Origin: Selaginella moellendorffii
Taxonomy: Eukaryota > Plantae > Lycopodiophyta
Assembly: GCF_000143415.4 (NCBI RefSeq)
Contig: NW_003314319.1
Coordinates: forward strand, 958,365-1,022,364
Length of the DNA stretch: 64,000 bases
Direction of reading: 5' to 3'
In this document: positions 5,135 to 64,000 of the stretch, piece by piece
How the letters are laid out: every line of letters begins with the position of its first letter
Position numbering within the stretch: the stretch's first letter is position 1
Program-made: the position numbers and the translations under genes
The notes under the pieces: model-generated
What the model saw: the letters and a program-made list of their open reading frames with translations, nothing else
Databases searched by the model: none
What the model was told of the DNA's origin: nothing

Positions 5135-8100
5135 ATGACGGCCATGGAGGGAGTTCGCCGGCGGATGAGCGCTCTCGAGGCGGCGACGCAAGCTATGACG
5201 AAGCTCACGCAGAGGTAGGCGCCGGAGGCATAATGTAGCTTAGCTGATGCAGTGATTCATCGATCGCCTCGAAATACTTCTTCCAGTGATCCCATCCCGC
5301 AAGAAGATCACGATTTCATAGCTCGGCATCCGACATGGGAGGATCAGCTGCCTCCGATTCATGGGGTGAGCAAAGCAGCGCCGGATCGCGACCGAGCAGC
5401 GTCATCATCTTCGTCTGCCGCATTGATTGCCGCACTGGCCCCAGCGATTCCCGATTCCCCGGCAACCAAGAACTGGAAGAGGGCTTACACTGCAATCAAG
5501 AGGCTCATGGTAACTTTACTTCTTTCGACTTTAGAGAGTCCTTATTTTCTGTTTCTAGAATATAAGAAGAAAGGCGAGGCGGACTGCTGTCGGGACTGGA
5601 GCAAGAATGGAGGGCACTGCGCTTGGAATTTGGAGCCTCTACAGCCCGTCACGCTTATACATTTTCAGGCTTCTCTACAATCAGTACGTGGATAGAAGTT
5701 TATCATCCTTCCTCTAACAGGCTTTGGTGGCAGGAGAGCCGAGTATGTTGTTGTGTTTCTTATATGCTCCCATATGGTAGTGCTTATCTTCCAAGCGATG
5801 GCTGGGTCTAGGCACGAACGATGGACACACGTCCGGAGTTTCAACATCGATTTCCTGGACGGGCTCATCACGGCGCTTTATACGTAATTTGTTTCCCTCT
5901 TCGAGGTTTCCCCTCACACTTGTGTTTGCAGGATTGAAATGGTTTTACGAATTTCGGCTCTTGGTTTTATCAACGGCCGTCACTGCTACATGCGGAATCC
6001 GTACAATAGGCTCGACTTTGTCATTGTTTTCGATTCCTGGTATTGTTGAGGTTTTGTATCTGATGGTCGTAAGTGTTTCACCAGCTCTTTGCGAGGTGCA
6101 GGGTACATATCATTGCTCGAGGTGTAACTGGACATGATTTTTTCGCGCGGATAGCCGTGTTCCGCGTGTTTCGTGGCCTGCTAGCGTTGAAGCACGTCAC
6201 ATTTTTTGCCGATGTCATAGTATGGTTTGTAAAATTTTGATTTGTGCATTGTTAACACTTGACAATAGGCCATCATGGCGGCCGTGAAAAAGAGCGTTGG
6301 TCCTCTCCAAAACGTTATACTTTTGACGTTTTTCCTGTTGGTTTTCTATTCTCTACTCGGCACGCAGTTCTTGCAAAACTCGATGAATCAAAGGTAATCT
6401 CGATAGTTCTTATCACGTGATCAAAATCCTCCTGGGCAGGTGCTTTCGAACAGCGGACAAGCAACTTGCTTATCCCATGCGCTTTTGTGACAAAAAAGCT
6501 GCTGGCGGCTACGTATGTCCACCATTTCAGAACTGTATGGTGAGTTTTTTCTATAAGCTCATTCCTTATTCATCTCTTTGTTTGTAGACATACGAGAATC
6601 CCAACCATGGAGCGACAACTTTTGATTATCTCTGGTATTCGCTGCTTACCATGTTTCAGGTTTGTGTCACTTCATAGCATCTTATCGCCTTAGCACACTT
6701 CAAGGTGGTCACTCTGCAGGTGATAACTTTGGAAGGATGGAGCCTCGTCATGCAGGATGTGAAGGATGCTGAAGGGGAGCGAGCCAGTAAGGCGTTGACA
6801 TTGTTTCTTTTATTGCTTACACATTCCATTGCACCACAGATTCTTACTTTATGACGTTAATTGTTCTGGGTACATATTTCCTGGCGAACGTTTTCATCGC
6901 CGGTATCAGTGGTGTATTTCTTCGTGTTCGATCAGAGCATCAGGTGCACACTTGTTTTTAATGACCGACTGATTTGGCTTAAGTTAAGCTGTTATTATCC
7001 AGGCTTTGCTGAGGAAAGCCCGTAGAACCTCGGTGTCCTTTTACGATGCAACGATGATGGCACAAGTGCTGAAAGACAATATCGTCAAAGCCGACTCGCA
7101 CATGCCATGGTATAACCGCTTACTCAACAGGTCAAGAAAGGTGCAGCAGAATGTCGCGAGAGCATTAAGTCGGACACGGACCTCCCTGCGGACTGCCCTT
7201 CAAGCCAGATCAATGAGAGTGCGGTCCAGTAGGTCTTTCAGTCGAAGTATGACGATAGGAGTTCAAGCAGCGTTGACAGTTTCCGAAAAAAGCCGCGACA
7301 TCGTTGAACATCCCAAGTTTGAGTGGGGAGTACTTCTCAGTGTCACCATTAACGTCGTGCTCTTATCGTCCTTCAAGTATGGGATGTCAAAACGGTTGTT
7401 GCATATGCTCGGTATTCATTTCACGACTTCCTTTCTATTCGTTCAGCATGATAAATTTTGTATGCAGACGGGTTACAAGCAGTAATGCTTTTTGCTTTCA
7501 GCGGGGAACTTCTGCTGCGCTTTCTAGCATACGGTCCTGGCGATTTTCTTGACGATGGTGAGTTCTTTGTTTTCATGTTGTCTTCTGGTCTGATCCCGAA
7601 ATTTTCAGGAATGAATTTGCTGGACTTGATAGTTGTTTTGACATCTATTGTGGCACTCAGTTCTCATTCGTTTCCAAATTTAACATCAATAAGAATTATG
7701 CGGTGGTTTTACTCTTCGAAGAAGTATGTTGCAAAACATCCCAGTGTAGTGGTGAGTTGCTGCGTTCACTTTGATTGATTTTAATACGTGATGCAGGCTA
7801 CTTGCATGGAAAGTGTTGGCTCTTTGGCGGGGGTTTTTTTCTTTTTCCTTCTGGTTATCATAGTAATCTCTATCATCAGCATGGAATTGTACAGTGGGCA
7901 GTATTACAGCTTTCCTGAAGAGTATCCGCGAGGAAATCATGATTCCATACTGGAAGCCATGCTCGTCTGGTTTACAGTAACCACGGCTGAATCCTGGGTA
8001 AACCAAATGTGGAATTCCCTGCGACCTGGAGTTCAATATAAGTAAGCAGCCACTGAAGTATCTCTAGTATTGACGCCTTCGTGTTTGCAGTGTAGTGGCA

Positions 8101-11100
8101 CCGTTTTTATACGTCTTTTACTTCGTCGTGACAGTTTACGTCGTTATGAATCTTATAATTGCTGTCTTGCTCGAGAGAAACGAGCTTACTGACAACCAGA
8201 AGAAGCGAATCCAACGGGTGAGTGAGGTAAAAAATGAGAACTGCATCTAAGAACTATTTTCTTTCAGATGGAACACATGAAGTTAATCAGGAGAATGCAA
8301 AGTCAGGCACTCACAAGAAGCGGAAGCTGGGTTGTGGGCGCAGTAGAAGGAATGAAAGGTTTGCGACGGATGACAACTCGCATGTTAAGCGTCAAAGATC
8401 ACGTAAAACCGGTTAAAGCCAGGCCAAGAGAGAAGGGGTCCCAGGGTCGTCAACGCCCGGCAGTAACAGCTGCTAAGGCTGATGGGGGTACTACTGGATC
8501 CGCTTTAGAGGCCCCATCATCGGTCGTTCCAGCTGCAGAGTCTTCTGAAGCACCGCCGTCGCGTCACAGGCGTTCTTCCCAAGTTTTACAGGTTTCTGGT
8601 TTTCCGTCTAATATCGGTGAAAGGAGGGGTTCAAGGACCGCACTTCAAGATGCCGTGATAACTCTCGACAAGATTCTCAGCAGTCCAAAAATTGGCAGAA
8701 ATCTAAGCAGGGCCTCTAGCAACAGGAAATCTTTCCAGCTGTCGGAGTACGAAGAGCTCGAGAGAACTCTTACAACCATACAGAGACCGTGGTACTTGCG
8801 AGAAGGGTCGCTTCTTCTATTTGGAGAGGGCAACACGATAAGGATCCTGTCTAGGAAGATCCTCGGCAGTAAACCGTACTTGTGGTTTGTGATAGTTTGG
8901 ATGGTCATCAATACTTGGCTCGTAGTTGAGATGGGAGATGATGGAGAGCCGATAATTGTCCCCGATTTCATTTGGAGTCTGCAGAAGATCAACTTTGTGG
9001 TAAGCACATGCTTATCTTATTTTGCTCGACATTGTACATTGTTTTGGAGCAGGTCTTTTTGGTAGACTGTTTGATGAAGATCGTTGCACAGGGACTTATT
9101 TTTGCGCCAGATGCATACTTGAGTGACTGGTACAACATCTTGGACTTGTTTATTCTCGTCACCGATGCGCTTATTCTTGTGAAGTATAACGCTGAGAATG
9201 AAACTTCCATACCAACCGTCGGTGCGTTTACTTCTCTTCGGCCGTTTCGTTTCGTGGTTCGGTTTACAGGACTGAGGTCATTATTATCAAATCTTTTTCG
9301 GACTATTCCAGCAATTGTGTCGGTTATTCTCTTTACATTTTCAATTCTCCTGATATTTGGAACCATCGGGCTGCAGCAGTTTCGGGGGCTTCTCTGGAAA
9401 TGCAATGACCCGAGGATCACGCACCGAGCATATTGTACCGGCCTCTATGTTAATGACATTGGCATCCTTGCTCCGCGAGCCTGGGTTAATAACGTTTTCC
9501 ACTTCGACGACATCCAGAATGCCCTCCTCAGTATGTTCGTCTGCTCCACTTTCGACAACTGGTTGACGCACTTCATGTACCCTGTCATGGACATCACTGG
9601 GGAAGACCACCAGCCTGTTCGGAACGCGAGTCCTGTCAACGCCTTGTTTTTCGTGGCATTCTGCTGTATCGGGGGATTTTATATCGTCAGAGTTTTCATC
9701 GGGGTGTTTATCAACGAGTTTGGAAAAAATTCTGGAGCAGTTCTTCTCACAGAGAGGCAGAAGCTGTGGAGGGACATGAACCGTATCATCCAGAAAACTT
9801 ATGCTATTCCGCTGGCTCGACGACCAAGCAATCCCATCCGGGGGATGTGCTTCTACTTGATTCGCAATCCGACATATCAAAAGTGCATGATCCTCGCACT
9901 CCTTGGCTACTCCGGGCTACTTGCGACTAACTATGCTGGCCAGTCAGCAGTTGTTTCGGACCGGCGTCAGATGGCTCACTGTGCGATTACAACATATTTC
10001 CTGCTCGAATCCGTGATGAAGTTCCTTGGTGACGAGGTACCTCATTCATCGTTTTCTCGATTGTTTTTTGTTTGACCACCTGGTTTTTCCTTTCTCCAGT
10101 GGAAGGTCTATAAGAACGAGGTTGCACGGCAGATGGAGTTTGGACTCTCCATAATGGCCGCCATTGGTTTCATGGGAAAGAAGGGAACGGTGAGGGGCTA
10201 TGTGGGCCGCACTGCCTACATTGCTCGAGTTTTTTGCATCATTCCTCACGTAGCGAGAGCGCGGGTTATTATGCGAACAATGTTCATCTGTTTGCCAACT
10301 GTAGCTGAGATACTCGCTCTTCTCGCAATTTTCATGTATATGTTCGCGGGGATGGCTTTTCAACTCTTCAGTGCAATGAAGGAAGGGACCTGCATTGGCC
10401 CGTCTGTCAACTTTCGCACTTTCGTCAACGCTTTCATTGCGGTGTTTCAGGTAAAGGCTTGCTTTTCTACCACTTTCAGTTTCGCTTTTCTTTTACAGGT
10501 TACAACTCTTGATAACTGGTCTTGCGTTATGATGGATACCACAATTGATGCACCCGCCTGCACCAACGGTAAAACACTACTCGGCGATGATTGTGGCTAT
10601 CCAGAGGGCGGGATTATCTTCTTCGCCTTCTTGGTCTTGGTCGGGAGCCACATATTCATGAACTTGTTTGTGGCTGTCATACTGGATGCTGTAACCTTCG
10701 GCCTTGTGAACGAGAACTCTATGGTCATGCCAGAGCACCTGTTAGCATATCGAAACTTGTGGAGCCAAGAACCATTCGATCCCAAGTAAGCCACTTAATT
10801 ACGTTCAAGTCCTTGCGGAACTAACTTTACAATCGTCCAGTGCTACGGGATACATTGGCATGCACAAGCTGCGACGATTTGTAAACGCCCTCGGTGATCC
10901 GCTGGGCCGGCGCTACAAATACGCGACCCAATGGTTTGGCGTGTTCCTCTCAATCTCTCTTTGTCTCTCACTCGTTTTTTTCTTTGTTCTGCTCAGGTAC
11001 ATGAGAATAGAGTACGAGGTGATGAGTTTTCGAGTTCCAAACAAAGGAATCCCTTTCAAGGAGCTGCTGGAAACGCTGACGCTGTATAAGATCGGACCAA

Positions 11101-11407
11101 CTGTAAGTAGCTGCTATTCCAAGCTTTTGATACTTACGTTTGGCTCGGATTAACGCAGGGGTTGCCTCTCACTCTGCGCATCGAGCGTGAGAAGCGGATC
11201 CAGGCCGTGTACATCCAGGGCGCTGCAACGAAAATGCAGGCTCTCGTGAGAGGTTTCCTGGCGAGGATAAGAGCCGGCAAAGGTGGTGCTGCTGTGAGCA
11301 AAACCGAGGTGGCAGCTCAACAAGAATTGGAATCGACAAGGAGCAAACCCGAGGTGGTAGAGATTGCCAGGGACGTGAGAGGCGAAGCTCTCCTGGTGGG
11401 AGAATAG
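5135..11407 (+). CDS. Four-domain (24-TM) voltage-gated cation channel alpha subunit, Cav/Nav/NALCN superfamily, multi-exon
   Basis: Four pore loops: FQVITLEGW (6720), FTVTTAESW (7971), FVCSTFDNW (9536) and FQVTTLDNW (spliced, ending ~10519). S4-like segments are present, S6 reads MNLFVAVILD, there is an LWSQEPFDPK EF-like tail, and an IQ-like motif AATKMQALVRGFLAR. GT-AG introns join the exons in frame wherever checked. Confidence 0.93.
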
Positions 11408-11735: not shown

Positions 11736-14560
11736 GGTTTTTTATATTAGTCATTGCATCATGTGATTATATCATGCAACTCTATATTTGACTTCTTTAC
11801 AAGTTGATGCCTTTGTAAATGGAAGTTAACAATTGCACTCTCTTTAACAGACTACCAAATGTTAATTTTAATAGGGTTGGATTTGAGAATATATCAATTG
11901 TAAGCTTTTAAATTTAGACTTCCTAAAATATCACCCAATTTAGTATTATTCAAATTTAAGGACATTTAACCCTAAGTATTTCAAGATCCTTACTCAATTT
12001 GAAAAAAGGGTGTGTTCCTATTTATATGCTTTTTCCCTTTATATTTAAACTTATATAGATCATCTTTTGAGCCATTCTCTTTGTTTTTTTACACCACCTT
12101 AAAGCATTAACAATTGTAAATATAATGTAAATATTAGTCATTTTCACTACTGACAAAAAAATTTCACTATAATCCACCTCTTTGACTTAAGTGAAACCTT
12201 TAGTCACCAAGCAAGCTTTGTTATGAATGGTATTATTGGTTGATTATGAGTTCTCTTGAACACCCATTTATGATCAATAAGTTTTCAATCAAAAGGCATA
12301 AAACAGTATTCAAAAGCCTTGATGGCATTTGTCCAAGATTAGGATTTGCCCCTAGTTAGCCTCATGGTACATTATGGGATTTGATTGTCTACAAACATAC
12401 ATAATTCAACTTCATCATTGGTAAGCAAGGATGTTATGTCTTCAAGCATCTTTTGAAAGGCTTATTGCACACATGGACCTTCCAAGATTGAGGTAACCTC
12501 CATGCCCTGTGCAACAAACAAAAACTTAGGATTGAGAACTTTTTCTTCTTTTTGCTCCCATTGGGGGGGGCAGGGGGGGTTTGCTGCCCAATTACACCAA
12601 GAAGACCTCCCACTCCCCACCAAAGGGCTATAGTAGTGGTAGATATCCTTTTCCCCTCCCTTACTTTGGTTTTTGGGTTTTGGTGCAAGCTAAGGGTGGT
12701 GGCAACCATACCTAAACACCCACTCCCACTAAATCAATGTTAATCCTCTCTCTATAGTTGGTCCCTCCCCCCTCCCTAGTAGTGGTTGATTGGGCATTTT
12801 AACTAGCATGATCCTTAGGGTCATTAGCTGACATTATTGGATCATTAATAATAGCCATAGAATGAGTGGGACAAGTAGATTTTTGTCAACAAACTTAATT
12901 GACATTACATCTAATGGTTGTTTGTATAAAAAGTCATTTTCATCAAAGACAATGTCTATACTAAACATTGTCTCTTTAGTGGTGGGATCCTATAATTTGT
13001 AAACTTTCTAACTATGCTCATTGTCATGAGCATATCCTACAAAATATGAGTTTGACTTTTTGGATCAAGTTTTTTGTAGAGGATGTGTGCATAACCTGTG
13101 CAACCAAAGACTTAGAAATGATAGACATTACGTTTTATGTCAGTTCAAGTTTCTTTAGGAGTTTTTCCTTTAAGTGTGACCGTGAGTAGTTAAGTTTGAA
13201 TATGCATGGCTATTGCAACTGTCTTCTACTAAAATTCTTTGTCAAACTTGCTCCCAACAAGGAGGCTGTGAGCAACATTCACCAACATCCAATTCTTACA
13301 CTCCACAACACCATTTTTCTGTGAGGTGTAGCAAGTGGTCACTTATGCTAGATACATGCTGCGTGGCAAATATCTCTAAAAGCATTGCTGACATACTCTT
13401 TTCTGCCATCTGTATAGAAGTCTTCCCAATCTTCATCTTGAATATGGCCTTGTATAGCTAAAAAGCCTCCACAACCTCAGCATAAAAAAAAAATGCATGC
13501 TTTTTCAACTGAAATCATCAATCACTGTTATAATATATTTCACACCAAAATGATTGAGCACTTCTATTAGTCCACAAAGGTCCGAATGGATCAACTCTAG
13601 AGGCTAGGATGATCATAGTGTAGACAAAGCAAAGATTCTATGATGGTGTTTCCCCAACATGCATGATTCTCAAAAAGTATAAATGAAGCTAATATTTAGA
13701 TGAAGTTTGATTACCATCTTCTTCAGAAGGATATCTTGGAGAGCTTTATAGCTGGCATGACTAAAATGACAATGCCAAATATAGGCACTGCTCTCTGAAT
13801 TTTTAGTCTCAAAATTTGTTTGTGGTAATATAACCGAAAGGGGATATTTCATATAAGTTTTCCCATGCAATAGTGTTTGCCCCATCATGTAAAAGCTTTG
13901 TTTGTCCATAAAAGTGACACGATTGTCATTGAAGACAACAACACTGTTTTCCTTTTATTCCAAGGTTTGTTACAACATCTATAGCATTTGGGCAATTGCA
14001 AGCCCAATGCCCAAATTCCTGGCACAACTTGCAATGGTCTTGACCAATGTGTGTTTCTTGTTTGCTGCAAAGAGTCCTACCAGCATGCCCTCCATGCTGG
14101 TGTAGAGTGGAGGCCGCTCCACCACCATATGAGATGCATCTTCCTTCCCCACAATGGCCTCCACTGTCACGTCCACAGCCTCCATGGCTGCCACCAACAG
14201 CCTCCAACCTCCTCACAAACATGGTGCAATGCACCTTATAACTTTGGGACCTCTCTCTATTCAGCAAGGAAGCGTTCACCAACTTTGTTACTGTTTCATC
14301 AAATGAAAGGTTTGGCTCCCACATCAATGCCTTGGCAACGTCATCCCAGTCTCTCAAAAGTGACTTGGAGAGCTTCACATTCTGCACGGAGTCAAAAACC
14401 TTATGGTCCTTGCCTTGAGAAGCTAAATCTGCATATAGCCCAGAGAGTCCACATGCTATTGCATATCCTCACCATCCTAAAAAGTGCAAACCTTTAAGAC
14501 TGAATGGATCTTCATCAATTCTATATCAAACTTCTTGCTATATAAATCATTGAGCCATGT
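11735..14560 (-). mobile_element. Degenerate Ty1/copia LTR-retrotransposon internal region (gag-INT-RT-RH)
   Basis: On the minus strand: zinc knuckle CKLCQEFGHWACNC (~13980-14030), IWHCHFSH pre-integrase, LELIHSDLCG integrase (~13570-13600), HKWVFKR and KACLVTKGFT*VKEVDYSEIF of RT (~12160-12280), and an RNase H end near 11740-11810. Many stops; no LTR recognised. Confidence 0.88.
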
Positions 14561-14703: not shown

Positions 14704-17700
14704 ATGGGGGAGAACACGGTGAGATTCAGCGCCGTCAGCGACATGCTGGAGCGCATTTCCAAGAGCAAGAAGCTGCCGGTGAAGCGCAAGACCTTCCGCA
14801 CCTTTCTGGATCACTTCTACACCGATCGCGAGTATTTCAGCGTGATGCGCCTAGTTCTTCCGGAGCTGGACAGGGAGCGCGGCAACTACGGCCTCAAGGA
14901 ATCGGTGCTGGCCAAGTGCCTCGCCGACGCGCTGGGCCTGGCCAAGGGATCCAGCGACGCCGACAAGCTCGTCAACTGGCGCAAAGGTGGGTCGAGCGTC
15001 GGGAAGAATGCCGGTAACTTTGCGCTGGTCGCCGCCGAGATCGTGGGCAGCCGCCAGAGCCACACCTCGGGCGGCCTCACCGTCAAGCGCGTGAACGAGC
15101 TCCTGGATCAGCTGGCCGAGGTGAAGAGCCGCGAGGAGAAATCCAAGGTCCTGGCGGAGTTCATCAACAAGACCAATCCCGTGGAGATGAAGTGGCTGGT
15201 GATGATCATCCTCAAGGATCTCAAGCTGGGCATCAGCGAGAAGACCGTCTTCAAGGAGTTCCACCCCGACGCCGACGAGGTGTACAACAAGACGTGCGAT
15301 CTCAAGCTGGTTTGCGAGAAGCTGGTGGATCCCAAGGTGCGATTCAAGCGCCAGGACATCGAGGTTGGCAAGGCGGTGAGGCCGCAGCTCGCGTCCCGGG
15401 TGAAGAACGCCGAGGATGCGTGGAAGAGGATGAGGGGGAAGAGGGTGATCGCCGAGTGTAAGTTCGATGGTGATCGCTGCCAGGTCCATAAGGATGGGAA
15501 CGAGGTCCACTTCTTCTCCAGGAGCTCCATCGATCACGTCGAGTTTGCCGCGGCCATGAGCAGCGTTATCTGCGAGAACGTCAAGGCGTCGAAGTGTATC
15601 CTCGACGGGGAGATGGTGGTGTGGAACCGAGTGACGAACAAGTTTGCCGAGTTTGGGACAATTCATGCGGTGGCCAAGAATGCCAAGGATGGCGTCCAGA
15701 GCGACGAGCAGCTTTGCTACATCGTCTTCGACATTCTCTACCTGGACGATTGCAGCGTGATTCACCAGCCTCTCTGCGAGCGACAGAAGCTGCTCGAGCA
15801 GAAGGTGACGACTGTCCCTGGGCGGCTCGAGCTGCTTCAGCCGGATCGGAGGAACTGCGGTGGCCAGCTCTGGTCGATCACTCCACAGTCCGCTGCCGAC
15901 GTCGAGAAGTTCTTCCTGATGACCGTGGATAACAGGGAGGAGGGAATCGTCGTCAAGGACTTCGATTCCAAGTGGGAGCCTGGGGACAGGAGTGGAAAGT
16001 GGATGAAGCTCAAGCCCGACTACGTGAAGGAGAGCGAGATGGATGTGCTGATCATTGGTGGCTACTATGGATCGGGACGGCGGGGTGGTGATGTGGCTCA
16101 GTTTCTTCTCGGCATTGCCGAGCGTCCAGCGAGCGGGTATCCGACCAAGTTCCACTCGTTTTGCAAGGTTGGCACGGGGCTCAGCGATGAAGAGTGCCGA
16201 GTTTTGGTTGACAAACTAAGGCCGTATTTCAGAAAATATGACAAGAACACCAAGCCTCCGAGTTACTACGTGGTGACTAACAACGCCAAGGAGCGCCCGG
16301 ACGTGTGGATCGAGCAGCCGGACAAGTCTGTGCTCCTGGAGGTGAAGAGCGATATCCGAAAGATCAAGTCGGAGGTGTTTGCCTCGCCTTACAGCCTCCG
16401 CTTTCCAAGAGTTACCAGGGTCCGGTACGACAAGCCTTGGAACGAGTGCTTGGATATCCAGGAGCTTGTGAGGATGGTGGCGGAGGACGCAGGTGCTGGT
16501 GTAAATGGAGATGGTGATGGCGGCCGGAAGAAGAAACAGGAGAGGGCTCCCAAGAAGAAAGCTCCAAAGCTTCCTTTGCTGGCGCCTCATATGCAGCAAA
16601 CAGACGTTTCCGGTGTGAAGAAGGTGTCCGACATGCTCAGCGGCCTGGTCTTCTTCCTGGTGAATTTCAAGCTCGAGGAGAAGGAGAGGTTCCACAAGCT
16701 GGTGGCCGAGTATGGAGGGAAGTTTTCGATGAACTTGAATGGCGACGTAACTCACGTCCTTGCCGAGAGTCCGAAGGGCCTTCTGTACGAGACCGCAACC
16801 AAGCGAGGGGACGTGATCCATTCCTCGTGGTTTATGGACTCGATTGCTGCGAAGGAGCTCCTTCCGCTCAGGCCCAAGTACATGCTTCACCTCTCGTACA
16901 AAACGAGGGAGACTCTCAAGGACACTTTGGACGAGTTTGGAGATCACTACTTTGTGGAAGTGGACGAGGCAGACATGAAGCAGCTGTTTGGACGCATGCG
17001 AGTCGAGGACCTCTCAGTGAACGAGAAAGACGTGGACGAGCACAGGGGCAGCCTTGGCGACAGGAAGAACATCTTTGAAGGCTGCTCGTTCTACTTTTAC
17101 TATCCTCGCGAGGCGGCAGTAGCAGATGAAGCGATGATTGCTGGAGTCGTTCTCAGGAGGCTGGAAGTGGAAGTGGAATTGCGCAAGGGTGCTGTGAAGC
17201 CGTCTCTTGCTGGAGCGACTCATATGATCGTGTTCTGGGACAGCGAAAGGGATCACAGTGAAGCCGGTCTCTCTTTCTCGGAGAACAAGCTGGTTTCAAG
17301 CAAGAAGCTGAGAGTCTTGAGTCACAGATGGTTGGAGGAGGCGCTGAGGAGGGACAGTGTTCCTCCGGAGGACGATTACGACGTGAGGCAGGCTTTGGGA
17401 TCTCGGCTGGTGGAAGAGTCTCCTCCACGACAAGAAGAAGAACCAGAGCTTTTGAAAGAAAACTCGGAGCATGAAGCCGGAGATGAAGAGCAGGATGAGG
17501 AGAGGGTGAGTGTTTTTGATACTCTAGTTTTGGAAGAGATGGACGGGCCGGAGAACGAAGAACTCCCACCGAAGAAGAAGCGGCACTTGCAAGGGATGGC
17601 TACCCCGACTCTGGCGAAGACGCTCACTTTGCCAACTACATCATCGAGTTTGGACTTGTGGCCTACCACGCAAGAAGCTGGAGCAAATCCGACACTGGTG

Positions 17701-18222
17701 ATCTCGGAGACTTTGAAGCTTCCAAGTTTCGAGCCACAGAAGTTAGCAGCTTGCTCGGAAACTTTGAAGCTTCCAAGTCTTGAGCCACGGAAGTTAGCAG
17801 CTTGCTCGGAGACATTGAAACTTCCCGAAACTCCTCCAGCGACAGTGATCACCGAGACTGTGAAGCTTCCGAGCTTTGAGCCGGACAAGGCGTTTGACAA
17901 CTTGCTGGCGGATTTTGCGTTCCTTCCCTCGATCACAAGGGAAGCTCCTGCGAAAGGATTTGCAGCTCCACAGCAAAACAAGCCACGGATAGTTCAAGAG
18001 GAAGTAGCGAAGGAAGACACAGCGATGAAGAAGAGCAAAGCAAGCTACAAGATAGAAGTTCCTGTGGAAGGATTTGCTGGAGGATTTGCTGCTCCACAGC
18101 GAAACGAGCCAGGGGCGTTTCAAGAGAATGGCAGCTCCTCCCGGGAAGAAATAGCGATGCCCATGCCCGCCAAGAAGAAGAACAAAACAAGCCTCAAGGA
18201 TGTGGTTCGCAACTTACTGTAA
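14704..18222 (+). CDS. LIG4: DNA ligase IV, intronless
   Basis: 1172-aa ORF with a DNA-binding domain (RLVLPELDRERGNYGLKE), adenylation motif ECKFDGDR, EGIVVK, WMKLKPDY, the OB-fold SLRFPRV and BRCT regions. Confidence 0.97.
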   Translation: MGENTVRFSAVSDMLERISKSKKLPVKRKTFRTFLDHFYTDREYFSVMRLVLPELDRERGNYGLKESVLAKCLADALGLAKGSSDADKLVNWRKGGSSVGKNAGNFALVAAEIVGSRQSHTSGGLTVKRVNELLDQLAEVKSREEKSKVLAEFINKTNPVEMKWLVMIILKDLKLGISEKTVFKEFHPDADEVYNKTCDLKLVCEKLVDPKVRFKRQDIEVGKAVRPQLASRVKNAEDAWKRMRGKRVIAECKFDGDRCQVHKDGNEVHFFSRSSIDHVEFAAAMSSVICENVKASKCILDGEMVVWNRVTNKFAEFGTIHAVAKNAKDGVQSDEQLCYIVFDILYLDDCSVIHQPLCERQKLLEQKVTTVPGRLELLQPDRRNCGGQLWSITPQSAADVEKFFLMTVDNREEGIVVKDFDSKWEPGDRSGKWMKLKPDYVKESEMDVLIIGGYYGSGRRGGDVAQFLLGIAERPASGYPTKFHSFCKVGTGLSDEECRVLVDKLRPYFRKYDKNTKPPSYYVVTNNAKERPDVWIEQPDKSVLLEVKSDIRKIKSEVFASPYSLRFPRVTRVRYDKPWNECLDIQELVRMVAEDAGAGVNGDGDGGRKKKQERAPKKKAPKLPLLAPHMQQTDVSGVKKVSDMLSGLVFFLVNFKLEEKERFHKLVAEYGGKFSMNLNGDVTHVLAESPKGLLYETATKRGDVIHSSWFMDSIAAKELLPLRPKYMLHLSYKTRETLKDTLDEFGDHYFVEVDEADMKQLFGRMRVEDLSVNEKDVDEHRGSLGDRKNIFEGCSFYFYYPREAAVADEAMIAGVVLRRLEVEVELRKGAVKPSLAGATHMIVFWDSERDHSEAGLSFSENKLVSSKKLRVLSHRWLEEALRRDSVPPEDDYDVRQALGSRLVEESPPRQEEEPELLKENSEHEAGDEEQDEERVSVFDTLVLEEMDGPENEELPPKKKRHLQGMATPTLAKTLTLPTTSSSLDLWPTTQEAGANPTLVISETLKLPSFEPQKLAACSETLKLPSLEPRKLAACSETLKLPETPPATVITETVKLPSFEPDKAFDNLLADFAFLPSITREAPAKGFAAPQQNKPRIVQEEVAKEDTAMKKSKASYKIEVPVEGFAGGFAAPQRNEPGAFQENGSSSREEIAMPMPAKKKNKTSLKDVVRNLL
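17704..17883 (+). repeat. 51-bp coding tandem repeat in the LIG4 tail (SETLKLPSxEPxKLAAC)
   Basis: Full units start at 17704 and 17755, with a partial unit at 17806 and a diverged unit at ~17851. Confidence 0.9.
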
Positions 18223-59900: not shown

Positions 59901-60282
59901 GGCTGTTCATGGTTGATTCACACGCTCCCTTGACGATGTCCCAGATTCTAAGTGACCCATCGGAGTAGCCACTCGCAACCTCGAGTAGACGAAAAAAATC
60001 ATCAAGCGAAGAGAAATGGAAGACAAGAATGTGGGAGCTTACCAGTGAGGAAGAGGCAGGCGTACATGCGATAGCAGTGACGGCGGGCCTGGAGCCTGAT
60101 TCGGGGAGAGAGGGCGCGAGAGAATGCACGCAGAGTCCCTGCTTGACGTTCCAGACGAGGAGCTTGTCGAGAGCGCCGGCGATGAGGAGCTTCCCTGTGC
60201 TATCGTAGCACAGATTCGATTCCGCCGACACAACCACACCGAAAGAATTGCATTCCTCGTAGCGGAGGTAGGACTTCACCAT
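56993..60282 (-). CDS. UTP12: WD40 SSU processome protein DIP2/UTP12/WDR3, multi-exon
   Basis: MVKSYLRYE, many WD40 repeats, LPGHRSDVR, LSLYGHKLPVLCIDIS and a C-terminal Dip2/Utp12 domain (SDLEQAFL..LPFSDAL). Confidence 0.94.
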
Positions 60283-60290
60283 GACTAAAA

Positions 60291-60310
60291 AAACCCTAAA
60301 CCCTAACCTA
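60291..60310. promoter_or_regulatory. Tandem telo-boxes immediately upstream of UTP12
   Basis: aaaccctaaaccctaaccta 9 bp upstream of the ATG. Telo-boxes are typical of plant translation and ribosome-biogenesis genes. Confidence 0.65.
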
Positions 60311-63300
60311 CTTTCTTAAGTTAAGAAATTGTAAAATATTTTAAATTTTTAAACATTACTACTTAAAAAAATTATATTGCAACTAAAATTTAAAATCAGG
60401 TTGGATTCACATTAAATTTAATAATTCATTAATAAAAATGATAATATCAAGACTTATGAATATAGTTACCATGTATATTATTTGTTATATGTCATCCATA
60501 TAAACACTTATTATTTTTATGACATTTGTGAAGTCAAAATATTTGTATTATTTTTCTTAATTATATATTTTTTAATATAATTTTTCATTATATTTATATA
60601 TATAGTTAAAATTAATTATATGAATGGCAATTCAAGTTACTCCAAAAGAGCTAATAATTTTTTAACATTCATAATATAGTGTGAGTTCTGCTTTTTTTAG
60701 TTTTTATATACAAAATTTTATTTATTTTTAAATCAGTATGCTAAAAGTGAATTATGAAAAAATTAAATTTCCGGGAGAAAAAGAATAAATAAAATTCTAA
60801 AATTCAAACTTATGGATATTTAATTTAAAAGATATAATTTTAGTTAGAAACCACTGTACAGAAAATTATGTTTAGAATAAATAATTATAAGTAAGAAAAG
60901 TAAAATGAATTTTTTTTGACATTTTAAAATAGTGATAAAAATTATAGGTATAATAACCTTTATTGGAATCAATAAATGAAAACAACAAAAAACATACATA
61001 TTTTAAAATCTATAAATGACTACCACAAATAATTAAAATTTGACACCAAAACCCAGCTAACTTCACCGAAGTTTGCTGTTCCACAAAAGAAAACATCAAC
61101 TACCTTCACCAATCACTTACAGAACACGCAACCATGCCTCCTCCAGCAAATGCCATGACCAACATTAGCAAAACTTTCACCCCTTCAACAAAATTCCAAG
61201 TAGAAGATTTGGGCCATTCAACCCCAACGGATACATTAATTTCAATACCACATCTAGGCCATTCATCCAACATCAATCCGAAAAGCTCATCTCCAACCAC
61301 CTCAAAGAATCCGAACCGACCACACCACCCACATCTGACAAAGCAAATTAAGCCTCCAGCAACTTCAAATCCTAGGACCAAGAACACAGCAAACCCTAGT
61401 GAGGAACACAAGGATCACGGAGTAGGAGCAGGAGTAGTAGCCATGCCTCAGCCATAGAGTCAGGTATGCCATGGTTATGACGAGATCAGGAAGGAGTACG
61501 AGGATAAACTCTGCGACCTGAGCTACTGCACCCATAAATTGTTCGAAGCCCTCAATCAACGCATGCACCGTGAGCAAGCGAACCACTTCCCAACACCAAC
61601 TGACATCTCACAGCACCTTCTCAAGCAAGACTTCATATACACCTAGGGAGCAATCAAGAAGGAGTTCTACAAGCCTTAAACCACTAGCTTGACACTCAGC
61701 TCGAGAAGATGAAGCAAATCTGTACCGACCTCTAGGACATCAGGAAGATCATCTTCAAGTAGCCATCAACCCCATCAGCAGCTCACAAATTCACCTACAA
61801 ATTCAAGTACAAAGAGCTTAACACTTGCTATCGGAAGCTCGAGGATGATCATACCACCCTCCTGGCCAAGGTAGCCGAGCTCCAGGAAGATTGGGATAGA
61901 TCCACCAGATAGTGTCCCCAACCATGAGCTTACACTCTTGCAGTAGAAGCATCACCTTTATCGATTTGAGCAACAATAGCAACAAGCGATGAAGACTGAC
62001 TACATTCGCACCAAGGACGGTGTCTAGTTTTGTTAGGGGAGCAGAGTGTATCAACCAAAAACCCAGGCTTAGGGGACTCCAACCTTGAAGCCAAAGCTGC
62101 ATCAGAGCCATAGATTTCATCATGCACAGCATATACCATTCATTAGCATATAGAACTACCAGCCTTTCAAGGGAAAAATCCGAGTTGTGGATCCCCATCT
62201 CCATTCATCATTTTCATATTAATATATAGTATTCATTCACTCATCTTCCTTTCTCAGCCCCTAGAGATCAAGCCCTTTTCCCCTTCTGTTTTCTCATTAG
62301 TAGTAGATATCCAGCGAAGAGGAGTATCCACACCTCTTCAATAATATAAATTTTTATCAAGAAATTGTGATATATATATAGAGCAAGTTAATTATATTAT
62401 TTCCAAATAAGATTTACATAACCATACATTAGGGTTAAAGTTTGTGCAAATTTTAGGGTTTAAATGATTATGGCACCTTTCACAAAATTTATGCACAGTT
62501 TATATAGTTAATGATATCTTAAATTGAATATTTTATTTAAAATATTTATATTTTAATTATATTTATATTTTGTTTATAATTGTATTATGATTTCAAGGGT
62601 TTTAGACCAGTTTGTGGGTATCAATTTAACAATGATAATTTTCACCCAAATTAAATTTTCAAATTAGCTTAAGGTTGGACTAAATTAGTTTTCAACAAAT
62701 CATTCTTCTTCCTTTCTTTTTTCTTTCTTTAGTAGTTTTTATTGTCTCTTTTTCTTTTAACAATGTACTTTAACAATTAAAACACTCTTTGATCTATAAC
62801 TTTCCTAAATCCTTTTTCACCTCTAATCAAATCTTGATGCTTTATACAAGTTATATCATGTGTTAGAGCAATCTAATACAATTATCCATTCACAACTTCA
62901 ATAAATTCTTCAACATTAACAACATTTTCCTAATTTTGAGCCAAAAATTAGTATAGCAACAAAGTTTAATGGGATGTAATCCAAGTTCTATAACTTCCTC
63001 AACCAAATCAAGTTTTTAGTTACTATACAACTTAGACAATAGTCCATTTTAACTTTTTATATGAGACTTGGCTGATATTTCACTTCAACTTTTTATTATG
63101 AGACCCTTTCCTAGTTTTCGGCTCTTTTTGAAAAGAGTGATTATGTTCTTCAAGATTTTGATTTCTTTGATCAACACTTCTCTAGTATATTTAACAATAC
63201 TGATTAAAACTGAAGTACCATTAGCAGGTTATAATAATTGTGCAAAAGCTCCAAATCTGCATTTATTTATGCATTGGAATTCCAGATGGTCATCACTAAT

Positions 63301-64000
63301 ATTTCATGGAATAATATAGCTCTCAAGAAACAATTATACCTTGACCTTTGTGAGGTTGTTACAGATCTAGTGTTTTCTGCCTTTGTGAAGTTGTTAAAGA
63401 TCTTATGCTTTCTCATCTAAATACAATATTTCTACTGTTTACAATTAATCATTATGTTTACTATAATAATCAATATTATTAAAACATTGTCACAAATATT
63501 TTTTGTTTGCTTAAGCAAACCTGTAAGAGGACTGAGATGGTAGTGAATATACCTCAAATATGCTTGAATATTCTAGGATATTTTACCATCTAACTCATTT
63601 AGATTAATCTTGTATTTATAATTTATAAACTTTCTTAAACCCTTTCTAGTATATTCTGTTTTATTCTACCATGTGCTATAAGATTAATCTTGTGTTTATA
63701 AATTACAAAAATGCTTATAATTATAAACTTTTCTTGATCAATTAGATTAATAAGTAGGAATAACACCACTATTAAACAAACCAAATGTTACTACATAAAA
63801 CATGTAGCAAATTATTTCCTCATCCAATGGTCTTAGTCTTTGACCAACCAACACATGACCAAAATGCAATTTCAATGGAGATTAGAGCTACATGTTAACA
63901 ATGTCGTTCCAATGTTAAATGATGATGCCAAATAAAAAATCATGCAAACCACTTCCATGAACAATATCCTTTTACTCTTACGCTTGTGTGGTTGATGTAA
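60311..64000. other. AT-rich, CpG-poor region with decayed coding-like relics (probable old transposable elements)
   Basis: Abrupt drop in GC content. Stop-riddled coding-like tracts at ~61100-62000 (+) and ~62700-63500 (-). No diagnostic domain recognised. Confidence 0.5.

What the first reader, a model, noticed from the sequence alone, without database searches (positions are those of the whole stretch)
5135..11407. Apparently intact four-domain Cav/Nav/NALCN-type channel in a land-plant genome
Seen: four 6-TM repeats, each with a pore loop, joined by plant-style short GT-AG introns and surrounded by ordinary plant genes, so it is not obviously contamination. Established: flowering plants lack 24-TM voltage-gated Ca/Na channels, whereas flagellated green algae have them. 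Inference: this is a retained channel of a seed-free plant, possibly used in flagellated-sperm Ca2+ signalling or fast electrical signalling. I cannot tell whether this locus has already been characterised.
Basis: partly seen in the sequence, partly recalled or inferred. Interest (0 to 1): 0.9.

Follow-up and report, generated by a model that had tools for sequence, protein, structure and literature searches.

The report
Four-domain cation channel gene in Selaginella
This is an intact, transcribed gene of the spikemoss Selaginella moellendorffii for a 24-helix, four-repeat calcium/sodium-channel-type protein, a kind that reviews say land plants lack, and I found its relatives only in plant lineages that still make swimming sperm.

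Summary
Window 5135-11407 (+) holds a 23-exon gene with 22 GT-AG introns of 45-72 nt. It encodes 1695 aa without a stop. My hand-built model is 100% identical to the NCBI Selaginella moellendorffii protein named 'L-type calcium channel alpha-1F-like'. RNA-run contigs from four studies are spliced at my introns, and allelic differences give pN/pS of about 0.15.

The protein has four Ion_trans repeats, an E-E-D-D pore ring, charge-poor but present S4 helices, a conserved III-IV linker motif, and an EF-hand-like plus IQ tail.

It is not a Cav3, Cav1/2 or Nav orthologue (AU test against Cav3, p = 9e-7). It belongs to a land-plant clade: liverworts, moss, lycophytes, fern and Ginkgo. The gene tree mirrors the species tree. 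The clade lies on the fungal Cch1 side of a 100/100 split. The predicted fold matches NALCN best.

No angiosperm or conifer member was found. That fits the sperm idea, but it is only a phyletic pattern, and expression in many ordinary RNA libraries argues against sperm-only use.

No paper in the library describes these genes. The scan noted paralogous four-domain channel genes on other pieces of this genome, plus unchecked Mid1/FAM155-like genes.

The parts
5135..11407 (+). Whole coding region of the four-domain channel gene (23 exons, 1695 aa), identical to NCBI S. moellendorffii protein P0151
5135..5214 (+). exon 1 (res 1-27), start codon
   Evidence: same start as the RefSeq model
5287..5509 (+). 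exon 2 (res 27-101)
   Evidence: 3' junction seen in RNA contigs
5559..5683 (+). exon 3 (res 102-143)
5734..5883 (+). exon 4 (res 143-193), DI S1-S2
5932..6039 (+). exon 5 (res 193-229), DI S2-S3
6102..6219 (+). exon 6 (res 229-268), DI S4
6269..6393 (+). exon 7 (res 269-310), DI S5
6440..6539 (+). exon 8 (res 310-343), DI extracellular Cys-rich loop
6588..6659 (+). exon 9 (res 344-367)
6720..6786 (+). exon 10 (res 368-390), DI pore loop
6840..6943 (+). exon 11 (res 390-424), DI S6
7003..7411 (+). exon 12 (res 425-561), I-II linker and DII S1
7468..7557 (+). exon 13 (res 561-591), DII S2
7609..7751 (+). exon 14 (res 591-638), DII S3-S4
7797..8041 (+). exon 15 (res 639-720), DII S5 and pore loop
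8091..8217 (+). exon 16 (res 720-762), DII S6
8268..8999 (+). exon 17 (res 763-1006), II-III linker and DIII S1
9053..10036 (+). exon 18 (res 1007-1334), DIII S2-S6, III-IV linker, DIV S1-S2
10100..10450 (+). exon 19 (res 1335-1451), DIV S3-S5
10499..10785 (+). exon 20 (res 1452-1547), DIV pore loop and S6
10841..10933 (+). exon 21 (res 1547-1578), EF-hand-like region
10997..11102 (+). exon 22 (res 1578-1613)
11159..11407 (+). exon 23 (res 1614-1695 and stop), IQ-like motif
6732..6734 (+). DI selectivity-filter codon E372 (T-L-E-G-W)
7989..7991 (+). DII filter codon E703 (T-A-E-S-W)
9554..9556 (+). DIII filter codon D1174 (T-F-D-N-W)
10511..10513 (+). DIV filter codon D1456 (T-L-D-N-W)
6145..6195 (+). 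DI S4 (res 244-260); charges in register with Cav3: R, R, L, K
7686..7727 (+). DII S4 (res 617-630): R, R, Y, K
9224..9277 (+). DIII S4 (res 1064-1081): the two outer charges are lost (G, T), then R, R, plus two R towards the S4-S5 linker
10205..10264 (+). DIV S4 (res 1370-1389): only two in-register R; the most degenerate sensor
9734..9793 (+). III-IV linker motif (hydrophobic pair, T-E-R-Q-K-L-W-R-D), conserved across the plant clade and its sister clade; aligns with the insect Nav F-M-T-E-D-Q-K segment
10757..10907 (+). Post-S6 EF-hand-like region (res 1538-1569; spans intron 20); weak Pfam GPHH match
11222..11272 (+). IQ-like calmodulin-binding motif (res 1635-1651)
   Evidence: IQ 18.3 bits, cut-off 20.3; IQ is precomputed for paralogues P0002 and P0152

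Best explanation
The locus is a working gene for the pore-forming subunit of a pseudo-tetrameric 24-TM cation channel. It belongs to a land-plant-wide subfamily inherited vertically from the ancestor of land plants. This subfamily lies outside the animal Cav1/2, Cav3 and Nav groups. It falls in the ancient assemblage that also holds fungal Cch1, which Senatore et al. 2025 call clade A (NALCN/Cch1).

Shown: the gene is intact, spliced, transcribed and under purifying selection. It has four repeats, an all-acidic E-E-D-D filter ring, and intact S2/S3 counter-charges. Its S4 helices keep only 2-3 in-register charges each, and VSD-IV is the most decayed. It has a conserved III-IV linker motif and an EF-hand-like plus IQ-like tail.

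Inferred: the four acidic filter residues bind Ca2+, so the channel conducts Ca2+, probably with some monovalent permeability as in Cav3 channels, which share this ring. The reduced gating charge makes it voltage-modulated rather than steeply voltage-gated, as in NALCN. The IQ tail gives calmodulin/Ca2+ feedback. The III-IV linker may close the pore after opening.

Its cellular job is Ca2+ entry across the plasma or flagellar membrane. Which cells use this particular paralogue is not shown.
For: Gene model and identity to the RefSeq protein. Splice junctions in RNA-run contigs of four studies. Transcripts in at least 14 RNA runs. 26 synonymous against 13 non-synonymous allelic differences, giving pN/pS of about 0.15. 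Four Ion_trans domains (E = 4e-123), and GPHH and IQ matches near threshold. E-E-D-D conserved in every plant member. S2/S3 counter-charges kept. III-IV linker and C-terminal alignments. Careful IQ-TREE: plant clade 100/100, internal order as in the species tree, and the clade lies outside a 100/100 clade holding Cav1, Cav3, Nav and chlorophyte, oomycete and ciliate channels. AU test rejects union with Cav3 (delta lnL 110.7, p = 9e-7). AlphaFold2 model of DIII-DIV-tail has pLDDT 85 and pTM 0.77. Its six best PDB matches are all NALCN (TM 0.78-0.82), against 0.62-0.72 for Nav and Cav. Senatore et al. 2025 report Chloroplastida channels in clade A, and the Selaginella proteome was in their set.
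Against: There is no electrophysiology; ion selectivity and gating are inferred from motifs. No NALCN sequence could be brought into my tree, and the link between the plant clade and Cch1+Rigifila is unresolved (53/48). By plain sequence score the protein is closer to Cav1.1 (331 bits) than to NALCN (234 bits), whereas fungal Cch1 scores best against NALCN. The filter is neither EEKE (NALCN) nor N/Q-E-E-E (the Cch1 rows). The AlphaFold conformation may be biased by what is in the PDB. Marchantia keeps more VSD-IV charges, so weak voltage dependence may hold only for lycophytes.
Confidence: 0.62

Rival explanations
1. Sperm channel. The family exists to admit Ca2+ into the flagella or cell body of swimming sperm, controlling waveform and chemotaxis, and was lost together with flagella in conifers, gnetophytes and flowering plants. 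This concerns the biological role and is compatible with the molecular description above.
For: Members were found in liverworts (Marchantia, Riccia), a moss (Ceratodon), lycophytes (Selaginella, Diphasiastrum), a fern (Adiantum) and Ginkgo, all of which have motile sperm. No angiosperm or conifer member appeared in the exhaustive representative search, nor in the word searches seeded with Selaginella or Ginkgo proteins. A sister-clade gene lies next to a CEP104 ciliary gene on marine contigs, which is weak support.
Against: Spliced transcripts of this copy occur in at least 14 RNA runs of 7 studies. The tissues are coded, but sperm or male-gametophyte libraries of this species are unlikely to make up all of them. 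There are about five or six paralogues in Selaginella against one in Marchantia. Many genes share this phyletic pattern for reasons unrelated to sperm. Conifer, gnetophyte and cycad proteomes are poorly represented, so their absence is weakly tested. I found no expression data for the Marchantia or Ginkgo gene.
Confidence: 0.3
2. Cch1-Mid1 / NALCN-FAM155-type complex. The channel works like the fungal high-affinity Ca2+ influx system or the animal leak channel. It would be largely voltage-insensitive, dependent on an extracellular Mid1/FAM155-like partner, and used in vegetative cells for stress-evoked or background Ca2+/cation entry.
For: The plant clade is on the Cch1 side of the 100/100 split. 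NALCN is the best structural match. S4 charge is depleted, with a lycophyte VSD-IV resembling that of Cch1. Expression is broad. Two unchecked scan notes report Mid1/FAM155-like genes elsewhere in this genome.
Against: The Mid1-like genes were not verified here. Senatore et al. 2025 found FAM155/Mid1 only in animals, fungi, apusomonads and cryptists, although Selaginella was in their proteome set. Every S4 keeps at least two arginines, and the charge-transfer residues are intact. Sequence scores favour Cav over NALCN. The filter differs from both NALCN and Cch1.
Confidence: 0.25
3. True T-type (Cav3) orthologue. The E-E-D-D ring would mark a low-voltage-activated Ca2+ channel homologous to animal Cav3.
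For: It has the same E-E-D-D ring as the Cav3 rows in my alignment. NCBI named one paralogue 'T-type alpha-1H'.
Against: The AU test rejects plants+sister+Cav3 as one clade (p = 9e-7). The plant clade lies outside the 100/100 clade that holds Cav3. It has an EF-hand-like plus IQ tail and a Nav/Cch1-type III-IV linker, in regions where the Cav3 rows do not align. The sister clade has E-E-D-E.
Confidence: 0.03
4. Pseudogene, contaminant or recent horizontal transfer.
For: None was found. The idea arises only because the literature says land plants lack such genes.
Against: The 1695-codon frame is open across 22 introns. The introns are short, in Selaginella style, and the neighbours are plant genes. 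Spliced RNA is present. pN/pS is about 0.15. The gene tree matches the plant species tree. Exon boundaries are shared with an orthologue in another plant genome, L002.
Confidence: 0.01

Closest known systems
NALCN (animal sodium leak channel, with FAM155/UNC79/UNC80)
   Same: Four-domain architecture. S4 helices have reduced gating charge, with the weakest sensor in domain IV. It has a C-terminal calmodulin-binding helix. It is the best structural match to the predicted DIII-DIV-tail (TM 0.78-0.82). It lies on the same side of the deep split as NALCN's fungal orthologue Cch1 (clade A of PMC12412391).
   Different: The filter is E-E-D-D rather than EEKE/EKEE, so Ca2+ selectivity is expected rather than Na+ leak. 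Plain sequence similarity is lowest among solved four-domain channels except Nav2.1/NaX (234 bits). Partner subunits are not shown in plants. NALCN itself was not in my tree.
Fungal Cch1 (with Mid1; high-affinity Ca2+ influx system)
   Same: Same side of the 100/100 split. It shares the III-IV linker motif type (hydrophobic pair, T, x-x-Q, x-x-W) and the post-S6 EF-hand-like segment. VSD-IV is degenerate. [quoted passage not shown]
   Different: A direct sister relation is unresolved (53/48). The Cch1 filter rows read N/Q-E-E-E. Cch1 lacks the clear IQ motif seen in the plant proteins.
Cav3 (T-type Ca2+ channels)
   Same: An identical E-E-D-D selectivity ring.
   Different: Not orthologous (AU p = 9e-7). 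The tail and III-IV linker are of a different type. The plant S4 helices carry far fewer charges.
Cav1/Cav2 (high-voltage-activated Ca2+ channels)
   Same: They give the highest sequence scores (Cav1.1 331 bits). The EF-hand-like plus IQ tail is shared (weak GPHH and IQ Pfam matches).
   Different: There is no AID (Cav-beta binding) motif in the I-II linker, where the beetle Cav1 row shows it. The filter is EEDD, not EEEE. The protein lies outside their clade.
Chlamydomonas CAV2 and other chlorophyte four-domain channels
   Same: They are four-domain channels of the green lineage. CAV2 is a flagellar Ca2+ channel (cited in PMC6509283), which is the functional analogy behind the sperm idea.
   Different: The chlorophyte sequences in my set (Tetradesmus, Myrmecia) fall in the canonical Cav/Nav clade, not with the land-plant clade. 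CAV2 itself was not available to test.

Membership tests
Four-domain voltage-gated cation channel superfamily (Cav/Nav/NALCN/Cch1) | Four homologous 6-TM repeats in one polypeptide | tested here: met
   Pfam Ion_trans, 4 stretches, E = 4e-123; hydropathy scan; colinear with full-length homologues
Four-domain voltage-gated cation channel superfamily (Cav/Nav/NALCN/Cch1) | A pore loop with one selectivity-filter residue per repeat | tested here: met
   E372, E703, D1174, D1456 align with the filter positions of the Cav1, Cav3 and Nav rows
Four-domain voltage-gated cation channel superfamily (Cav/Nav/NALCN/Cch1) | S4 with R/K at every third position, plus S2/S3 counter-charges | tested here: met
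   Each S4 has 2-3 in-register charges, fewer than Cav3; the S2 aromatic+acidic and S3 acidic residues are kept in all four sensors
Four-domain voltage-gated cation channel superfamily (Cav/Nav/NALCN/Cch1) | Fold of solved four-domain channels | tested here: met
   AF2 pLDDT 85.3, pTM 0.77 for residues 930-1665; 192 PDB matches with E <= 0.001, and all 50 listed are four-domain channels
NALCN/Cch1 'clade A' (Senatore et al. 2025) | Falls with NALCN/Cch1 and CRuMs channels, apart from the Cav1/2, Cav3 and Nav clades | tested here: met
   A 100/100 bipartition puts plants+sister with Cch1, Rigifila and Picozoa, and against 21 rows holding Cav1, Cav3 and Nav. NALCN itself is absent from my data. 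The paper reports Chloroplastida in clade A
NALCN/Cch1 'clade A' (Senatore et al. 2025) | Direct sister or orthologue of NALCN/Cch1 | tested here: inconclusive
   The branch joining plants+sister to Cch1+Rigifila has 53/48 support
NALCN/Cch1 'clade A' (Senatore et al. 2025) | Works with FAM155/Mid1 (and UNC79/UNC80) subunits | not tested
   Only unchecked scan notes of Mid1/FAM155-like genes in this genome; the published search found none in plants
NALCN/Cch1 'clade A' (Senatore et al. 2025) | Filter EEKE/EKEE (NALCN) or N/Q-E-E-E (Cch1 rows) | tested here: not met
   The plant filter is E-E-D-D
Cav3 (T-type) | E-E-D-D filter | tested here: met
Cav3 (T-type) | Phylogenetic placement in the Cav3 clade | tested here: not met
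   Tree; AU test p = 9.35e-7
Cav1/Cav2 (HVA) | E-E-E-E filter and an AID motif in the I-II linker | tested here: not met
   The filter is EEDD. No AID-like segment is present where the Cav1 row has Q-Q-L-E-E-D-L-R-G-Y-L-D-W-I
Cav1/Cav2 (HVA) | EF-hand plus IQ C-terminal module | tested here: inconclusive
   GPHH 18.5 bits (cut-off 26.8) and IQ 18.3 bits (cut-off 20.3). The alignment supports both. IQ passes in paralogues
Chlorophyte flagellar CAV2-type channels | Orthology with green-algal four-domain channels | tested here: inconclusive
   Tetradesmus and Myrmecia channels fall in the other major clade. CAV2 itself and streptophyte algae could not be included

The most novel reading that the evidence does not exclude
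Land plants that still make swimming sperm retain a complete Cch1/NALCN-type channel complex. It would consist of this E-E-D-D pore subunit and a Mid1/FAM155-like extracellular partner. It would supply the Ca2+ entry that steers sperm flagella, and possibly the Ca2+ component of bryophyte action potentials. The complex would have been discarded together with flagella on the way to conifers and flowering plants. That would overturn the statement that embryophytes have no four-domain channels, and it would name a missing Ca2+ channel of plant sperm.
Probability: 0.2. Interest if true: 0.85.

Novelty: new member of a known kind. Interest (0 to 1): 0.68.

Why it matters
Reviews and surveys state that embryophytes lack four-domain Ca2+/Na+ channels (PMC5824947, PMC6509283, PMC12455266). 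Here is an intact, expressed and selectively constrained one. It has orthologues from liverworts to Ginkgo.

That changes the inventory of Ca2+-entry pathways available to non-flowering plants. It also dates the loss to within the seed plants rather than to the origin of land plants.

It offers a concrete candidate for two open questions. The first is which channel carries Ca2+ into plant sperm during chemotaxis. The second is which channel carries the Ca2+ component of action potentials in bryophytes.

Marchantia has a single copy (Mp2g23520), so both questions can be tested directly by knockout. An E-E-D-D ring combined with a NALCN-like scaffold also makes the protein an informative natural experiment for selectivity and gating in this superfamily.

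Tried and rejected
- The alignment-seeded homology search was swamped by animal Nav/Cav isoforms. It did not even recover Marchantia, so it says nothing about plant distribution.
- The Atlas look-alike search for the sister clade returned only generic Nav/Cav clusters and did not name the organism.
- Tissue of the RNA runs could not be learned. Run names are coded, and the word filter accepts only SRA library terms.
- The gene ids Mp2g23520, Mapoly0069s0001 and Gb_09885 occur in no searchable paper. They also do not occur in the supplements of two Marchantia sperm papers. The Cycas sperm transcriptome paper does not mention channels.
- MAFFT --auto on 158 sequences timed out. I used FFT-NS-2 and then L-INS-i on subsets.
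- No NALCN or Chlamydomonas CAV2 sequence could be obtained as a stored protein. I used PDB score controls and a fold search instead.
- Considered and rejected: Cav3 orthology, pseudogene, contamination and HGT (see rivals).
- I did not assign the unnamed Logan contigs (L001, L002) to species.
Full report
**What is there.**
The + strand between 5135 and 11407 carries many short ORFs with Ion_trans matches. I read the sequence and laid a full-length homologue on it with tblastn. From these I built a model of 23 exons joined by 22 introns. Every intron is GT..AG and 45-72 nt long. The model gives a 5088-nt frame of 1695 codons without a stop. It is identical, residue for residue, to database protein P0151. 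NCBI calls P0151 'voltage-dependent L-type calcium channel subunit alpha-1F-like isoform X1 [Selaginella moellendorffii]', and it is recorded on a 1.26-Mb contig. The flanking genes are typical land-plant genes: three PPR genes, DNA ligase IV, a PUP purine permease, a SWIRM-Myb protein, RAD5A and WDR3. The locus is therefore a resident gene of the spikemoss genome.

**Is it alive?**
At least 14 runs flagged as RNA, from seven studies, hold 31-55% of the sampled words of the locus. I laid the contigs of four of them, from four studies. They skip exactly my introns, for example 5510-5558, 5684-5733, 5884-5931, 6944-7002, 7412-7467, 7558-7608, 7752-7796, 8042-8090, 8218-8267, 9000-9052, 10786-10840, 10934-10996 and 11103-11158. 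These contigs differ from the window at scattered positions, presumably because they come from the other haplotype or another strain. Of the 39 best-supported coding differences, 26 are synonymous and 13 are not. With 1181 synonymous and 3904 non-synonymous sites this gives pN/pS of about 0.15. This covers only the listed subset of 99 differences. The gene is transcribed, correctly spliced and under purifying selection. The tissues of the runs are not disclosed.

**Anatomy.**
- Repeats and pore. Pfam finds four Ion_trans stretches (E = 4e-123). The filter residues are E372, E703, D1174 and D1456. This E-E-D-D ring is conserved in all plant relatives that cover the position.
- S4 helices. Read in register with the Cav3 rows, the S4 helices carry fewer charges. 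DI has R, R, L, K. DII has R, R, Y, K. DIII has lost the two outer charges and keeps R, R. DIV keeps only two arginines. Marchantia keeps K, R, R, R in DIV, so the loss there is lycophyte-specific.
- Counter-charges. The S2 aromatic/acidic and S3 acidic residues of the charge-transfer centre are present in all four sensors.
- I-II linker. It has no AID motif, whereas the beetle Cav1 row shows one.
- III-IV linker. It carries a very conserved hydrophobic-pair-T-E-R-Q-K-L-W-R-D motif. This aligns with the F-M-T-E-D-Q-K segment of insect Nav and with similar segments in Cch1 and protist channels, but not with Cav1 or Cav3.
- Tail. After DIV S6 comes an EF-hand-like segment and an IQ-like motif. 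The Pfam GPHH and IQ matches lie just under threshold in this copy. IQ passes in two paralogues.
- Predicted structure. An AlphaFold2 model of residues 930-1665, built on a 32-sequence alignment, is confident (pLDDT 85.3, pTM 0.77).

**Relatives.**
An exhaustive HMMER search with the domain-III exon against 1.84 billion cluster representatives gave 5790 hits.
- Selaginella has further copies: P0002, P0152, P0155, P0157 and P0001.
- Diphasiastrum complanatum has two genes.
- Marchantia polymorpha has one (Mp2g23520).
- Riccia sorocarpa, Ginkgo biloba (Gb_09885), the fern Adiantum nelumboides and the moss Ceratodon purpureus each have one.
- Two unnamed Logan contigs also carry members. One is a transcript closest to the fern. 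The other is a 14.7-kb genomic contig with a full-length orthologue that shares the Selaginella exon boundaries.

No angiosperm, conifer or gnetophyte protein appeared in the exhaustive list. None appeared in word searches seeded with a Selaginella or the Ginkgo protein either. The Ginkgo search scored all 6845 candidates. For angiosperms, whose proteomes are abundant in the collection, this is a meaningful absence. For conifers, gnetophytes and cycads it is weak.

**Family placement.**
I ran a careful IQ-TREE analysis of 48 rows and 1284 columns under LG+C20+F+G4 PMSF.
- The land-plant clade has 100/100 support.
- Inside it, liverworts+moss (97/92) stand apart from tracheophytes (100/99).
- The tracheophytes split into (Ginkgo,(fern, transcript)) (96/92) and lycophytes (99/98). 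This is the species tree, so inheritance was vertical.
- The sister group (100/100) is four intronless ORFs from gene-dense aquatic metagenome contigs of unidentified picoeukaryotes, with an E-E-D-E ring.
- These 18 rows lie outside a 100/100 clade of 21 rows. That clade contains Cav1, Cav3, Nav, and chlorophyte (Tetradesmus, Myrmecia), oomycete and ciliate channels.
- The 18 rows lie on the same side as fungal Cch1, Rigifila and Picozoa. Their exact relation to Cch1 is unresolved (53/48).

An AU test rejects a union with the Cav3 group (delta lnL 110.7, p = 9e-7). The E-E-D-D ring is therefore not a sign of T-type ancestry.

This split matches 'clade A' of Senatore et al. 2025. That clade holds NALCN, Cch1, CRuMs and 'more divergent channels' from Chloroplastida. 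The Selaginella, Marchantia and Physcomitrium proteomes were in their set, but land plants are not discussed.

I could not bring a NALCN sequence into the tree, so I used two proxies.
- Sequence scores against the PDB. Cch1 scores best against NALCN (247 bits, against 228 for Cav1). The Selaginella protein scores best against Cav1.1 (331 bits), then Cav2.2 and Cav1.2 (317), Cav3.2 (283), Nav1.7 (270) and NALCN (234).
- Fold search with the AlphaFold model. The six best PDB matches are all NALCN (TM 0.78-0.82), against 0.62-0.72 for Nav and Cav.

Sequence conservatism therefore points to Cav, while phylogeny and predicted fold point to the NALCN/Cch1 side. I read it as a slowly evolving clade-A channel.

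**How it probably works.**
Shown: it is a complete four-domain pore subunit with an all-acidic ring, reduced but not abolished gating charge, and a Nav/Cch1-type III-IV linker. It also has an EF-hand-like plus IQ tail.

Inferred:
- It conducts Ca2+.
- It is modulated rather than steeply gated by voltage, with VSD-IV nearly inert in lycophytes.
- Calmodulin binds the IQ helix and feeds back on gating.
- The III-IV linker may contribute to closure.

The cellular role is open. However, this copy is present in many ordinary RNA libraries, and the family has expanded in Selaginella. A sperm-only role for it is therefore unlikely, and subfunctionalised paralogues are possible.

A second reading comes from two unchecked notes of this scan, which report Mid1/FAM155-like genes elsewhere in the genome. 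On that reading this is a Cch1-Mid1-type Ca2+ influx system. The published survey found no such subunit in plants, and I could not test the notes.

**What is known.**
Pozdnyakov et al. 2018 state that embryophytes lack four-domain channel genes and report finding none. Helliwell et al. 2019 and a 2025 essay repeat that land plants lost them. Ten full-text searches found no paper that names the Selaginella, Marchantia or Ginkgo genes, and none that links such a channel to plant sperm.

The genes are public and machine-annotated. NCBI's names for the paralogues variously say L-type, T-type or sodium channel, which is itself a sign that they fit no animal subfamily. The scan noted paralogous four-domain channel genes on other pieces of this genome.

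**Verdict.**
The finding is real. Its 'retained channel' reading is right. Its family label needs the shift from Cav/Nav to the NALCN/Cch1-side clade. The sperm link is a reasonable but untested hypothesis.

Noticed in passing
L002:2122-9980 (+), Logan contig of run SRR33208241: A full-length orthologue of the channel sits in an unnamed compact plant-like genome (GC 0.446). It has the same exon boundaries as the Selaginella gene but longer introns. It branches at the unresolved base of the land-plant clade; a hornwort or a streptophyte alga would fit.
   Followed up: partly
L003-L006 (metagenome contigs carrying P0015 and P0182): The sister clade of the plant channels is encoded by intronless ORFs of 1600-1730 aa. 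These lie on gene-dense aquatic or marine contigs (GC 0.56-0.57), next to a CEP104 ciliary gene and a cNMP-binding kinase. The pore ring is E-E-D-E and the organism is unidentified.
   Followed up: partly
other pieces of the same genome (scan notes s1-374919, s1-346922): First-stage notes claim intact Mid1/FAM155(NALF)-like accessory-subunit genes in this genome. If real, they would pair naturally with this channel and would contradict the published absence in plants. I could not reach the sequences.
   Followed up: no
window 10205-10264 (DIV S4): The lycophyte DIV S4 has an I-I-P-H segment at the same columns as the L-I-P-R of fungal Cch1. Marchantia keeps R-x-x-R-x-x-R there, so this looks like convergent decay of the fourth voltage sensor.
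   Followed up: partly
window 14704-18222 (+): A single 1172-aa ORF has the complete DNA ligase IV domain set (ligase N, M and C plus BRCT), apparently without introns.
   Followed up: no
window 12001-14000 and 60001-64000: These stretches are AT-rich (GC 0.36, and 0.29-0.37) in an otherwise roughly 50% GC window. I did not examine them.
   Followed up: no
window 5433 and 7681: RNA-run contigs carry a 9-nt insertion after 5433 and a 9-nt deletion at 7681 relative to the window. Both are in frame. They look like allelic or haplotype indels in the N-terminus and in DII S4.
   Followed up: no
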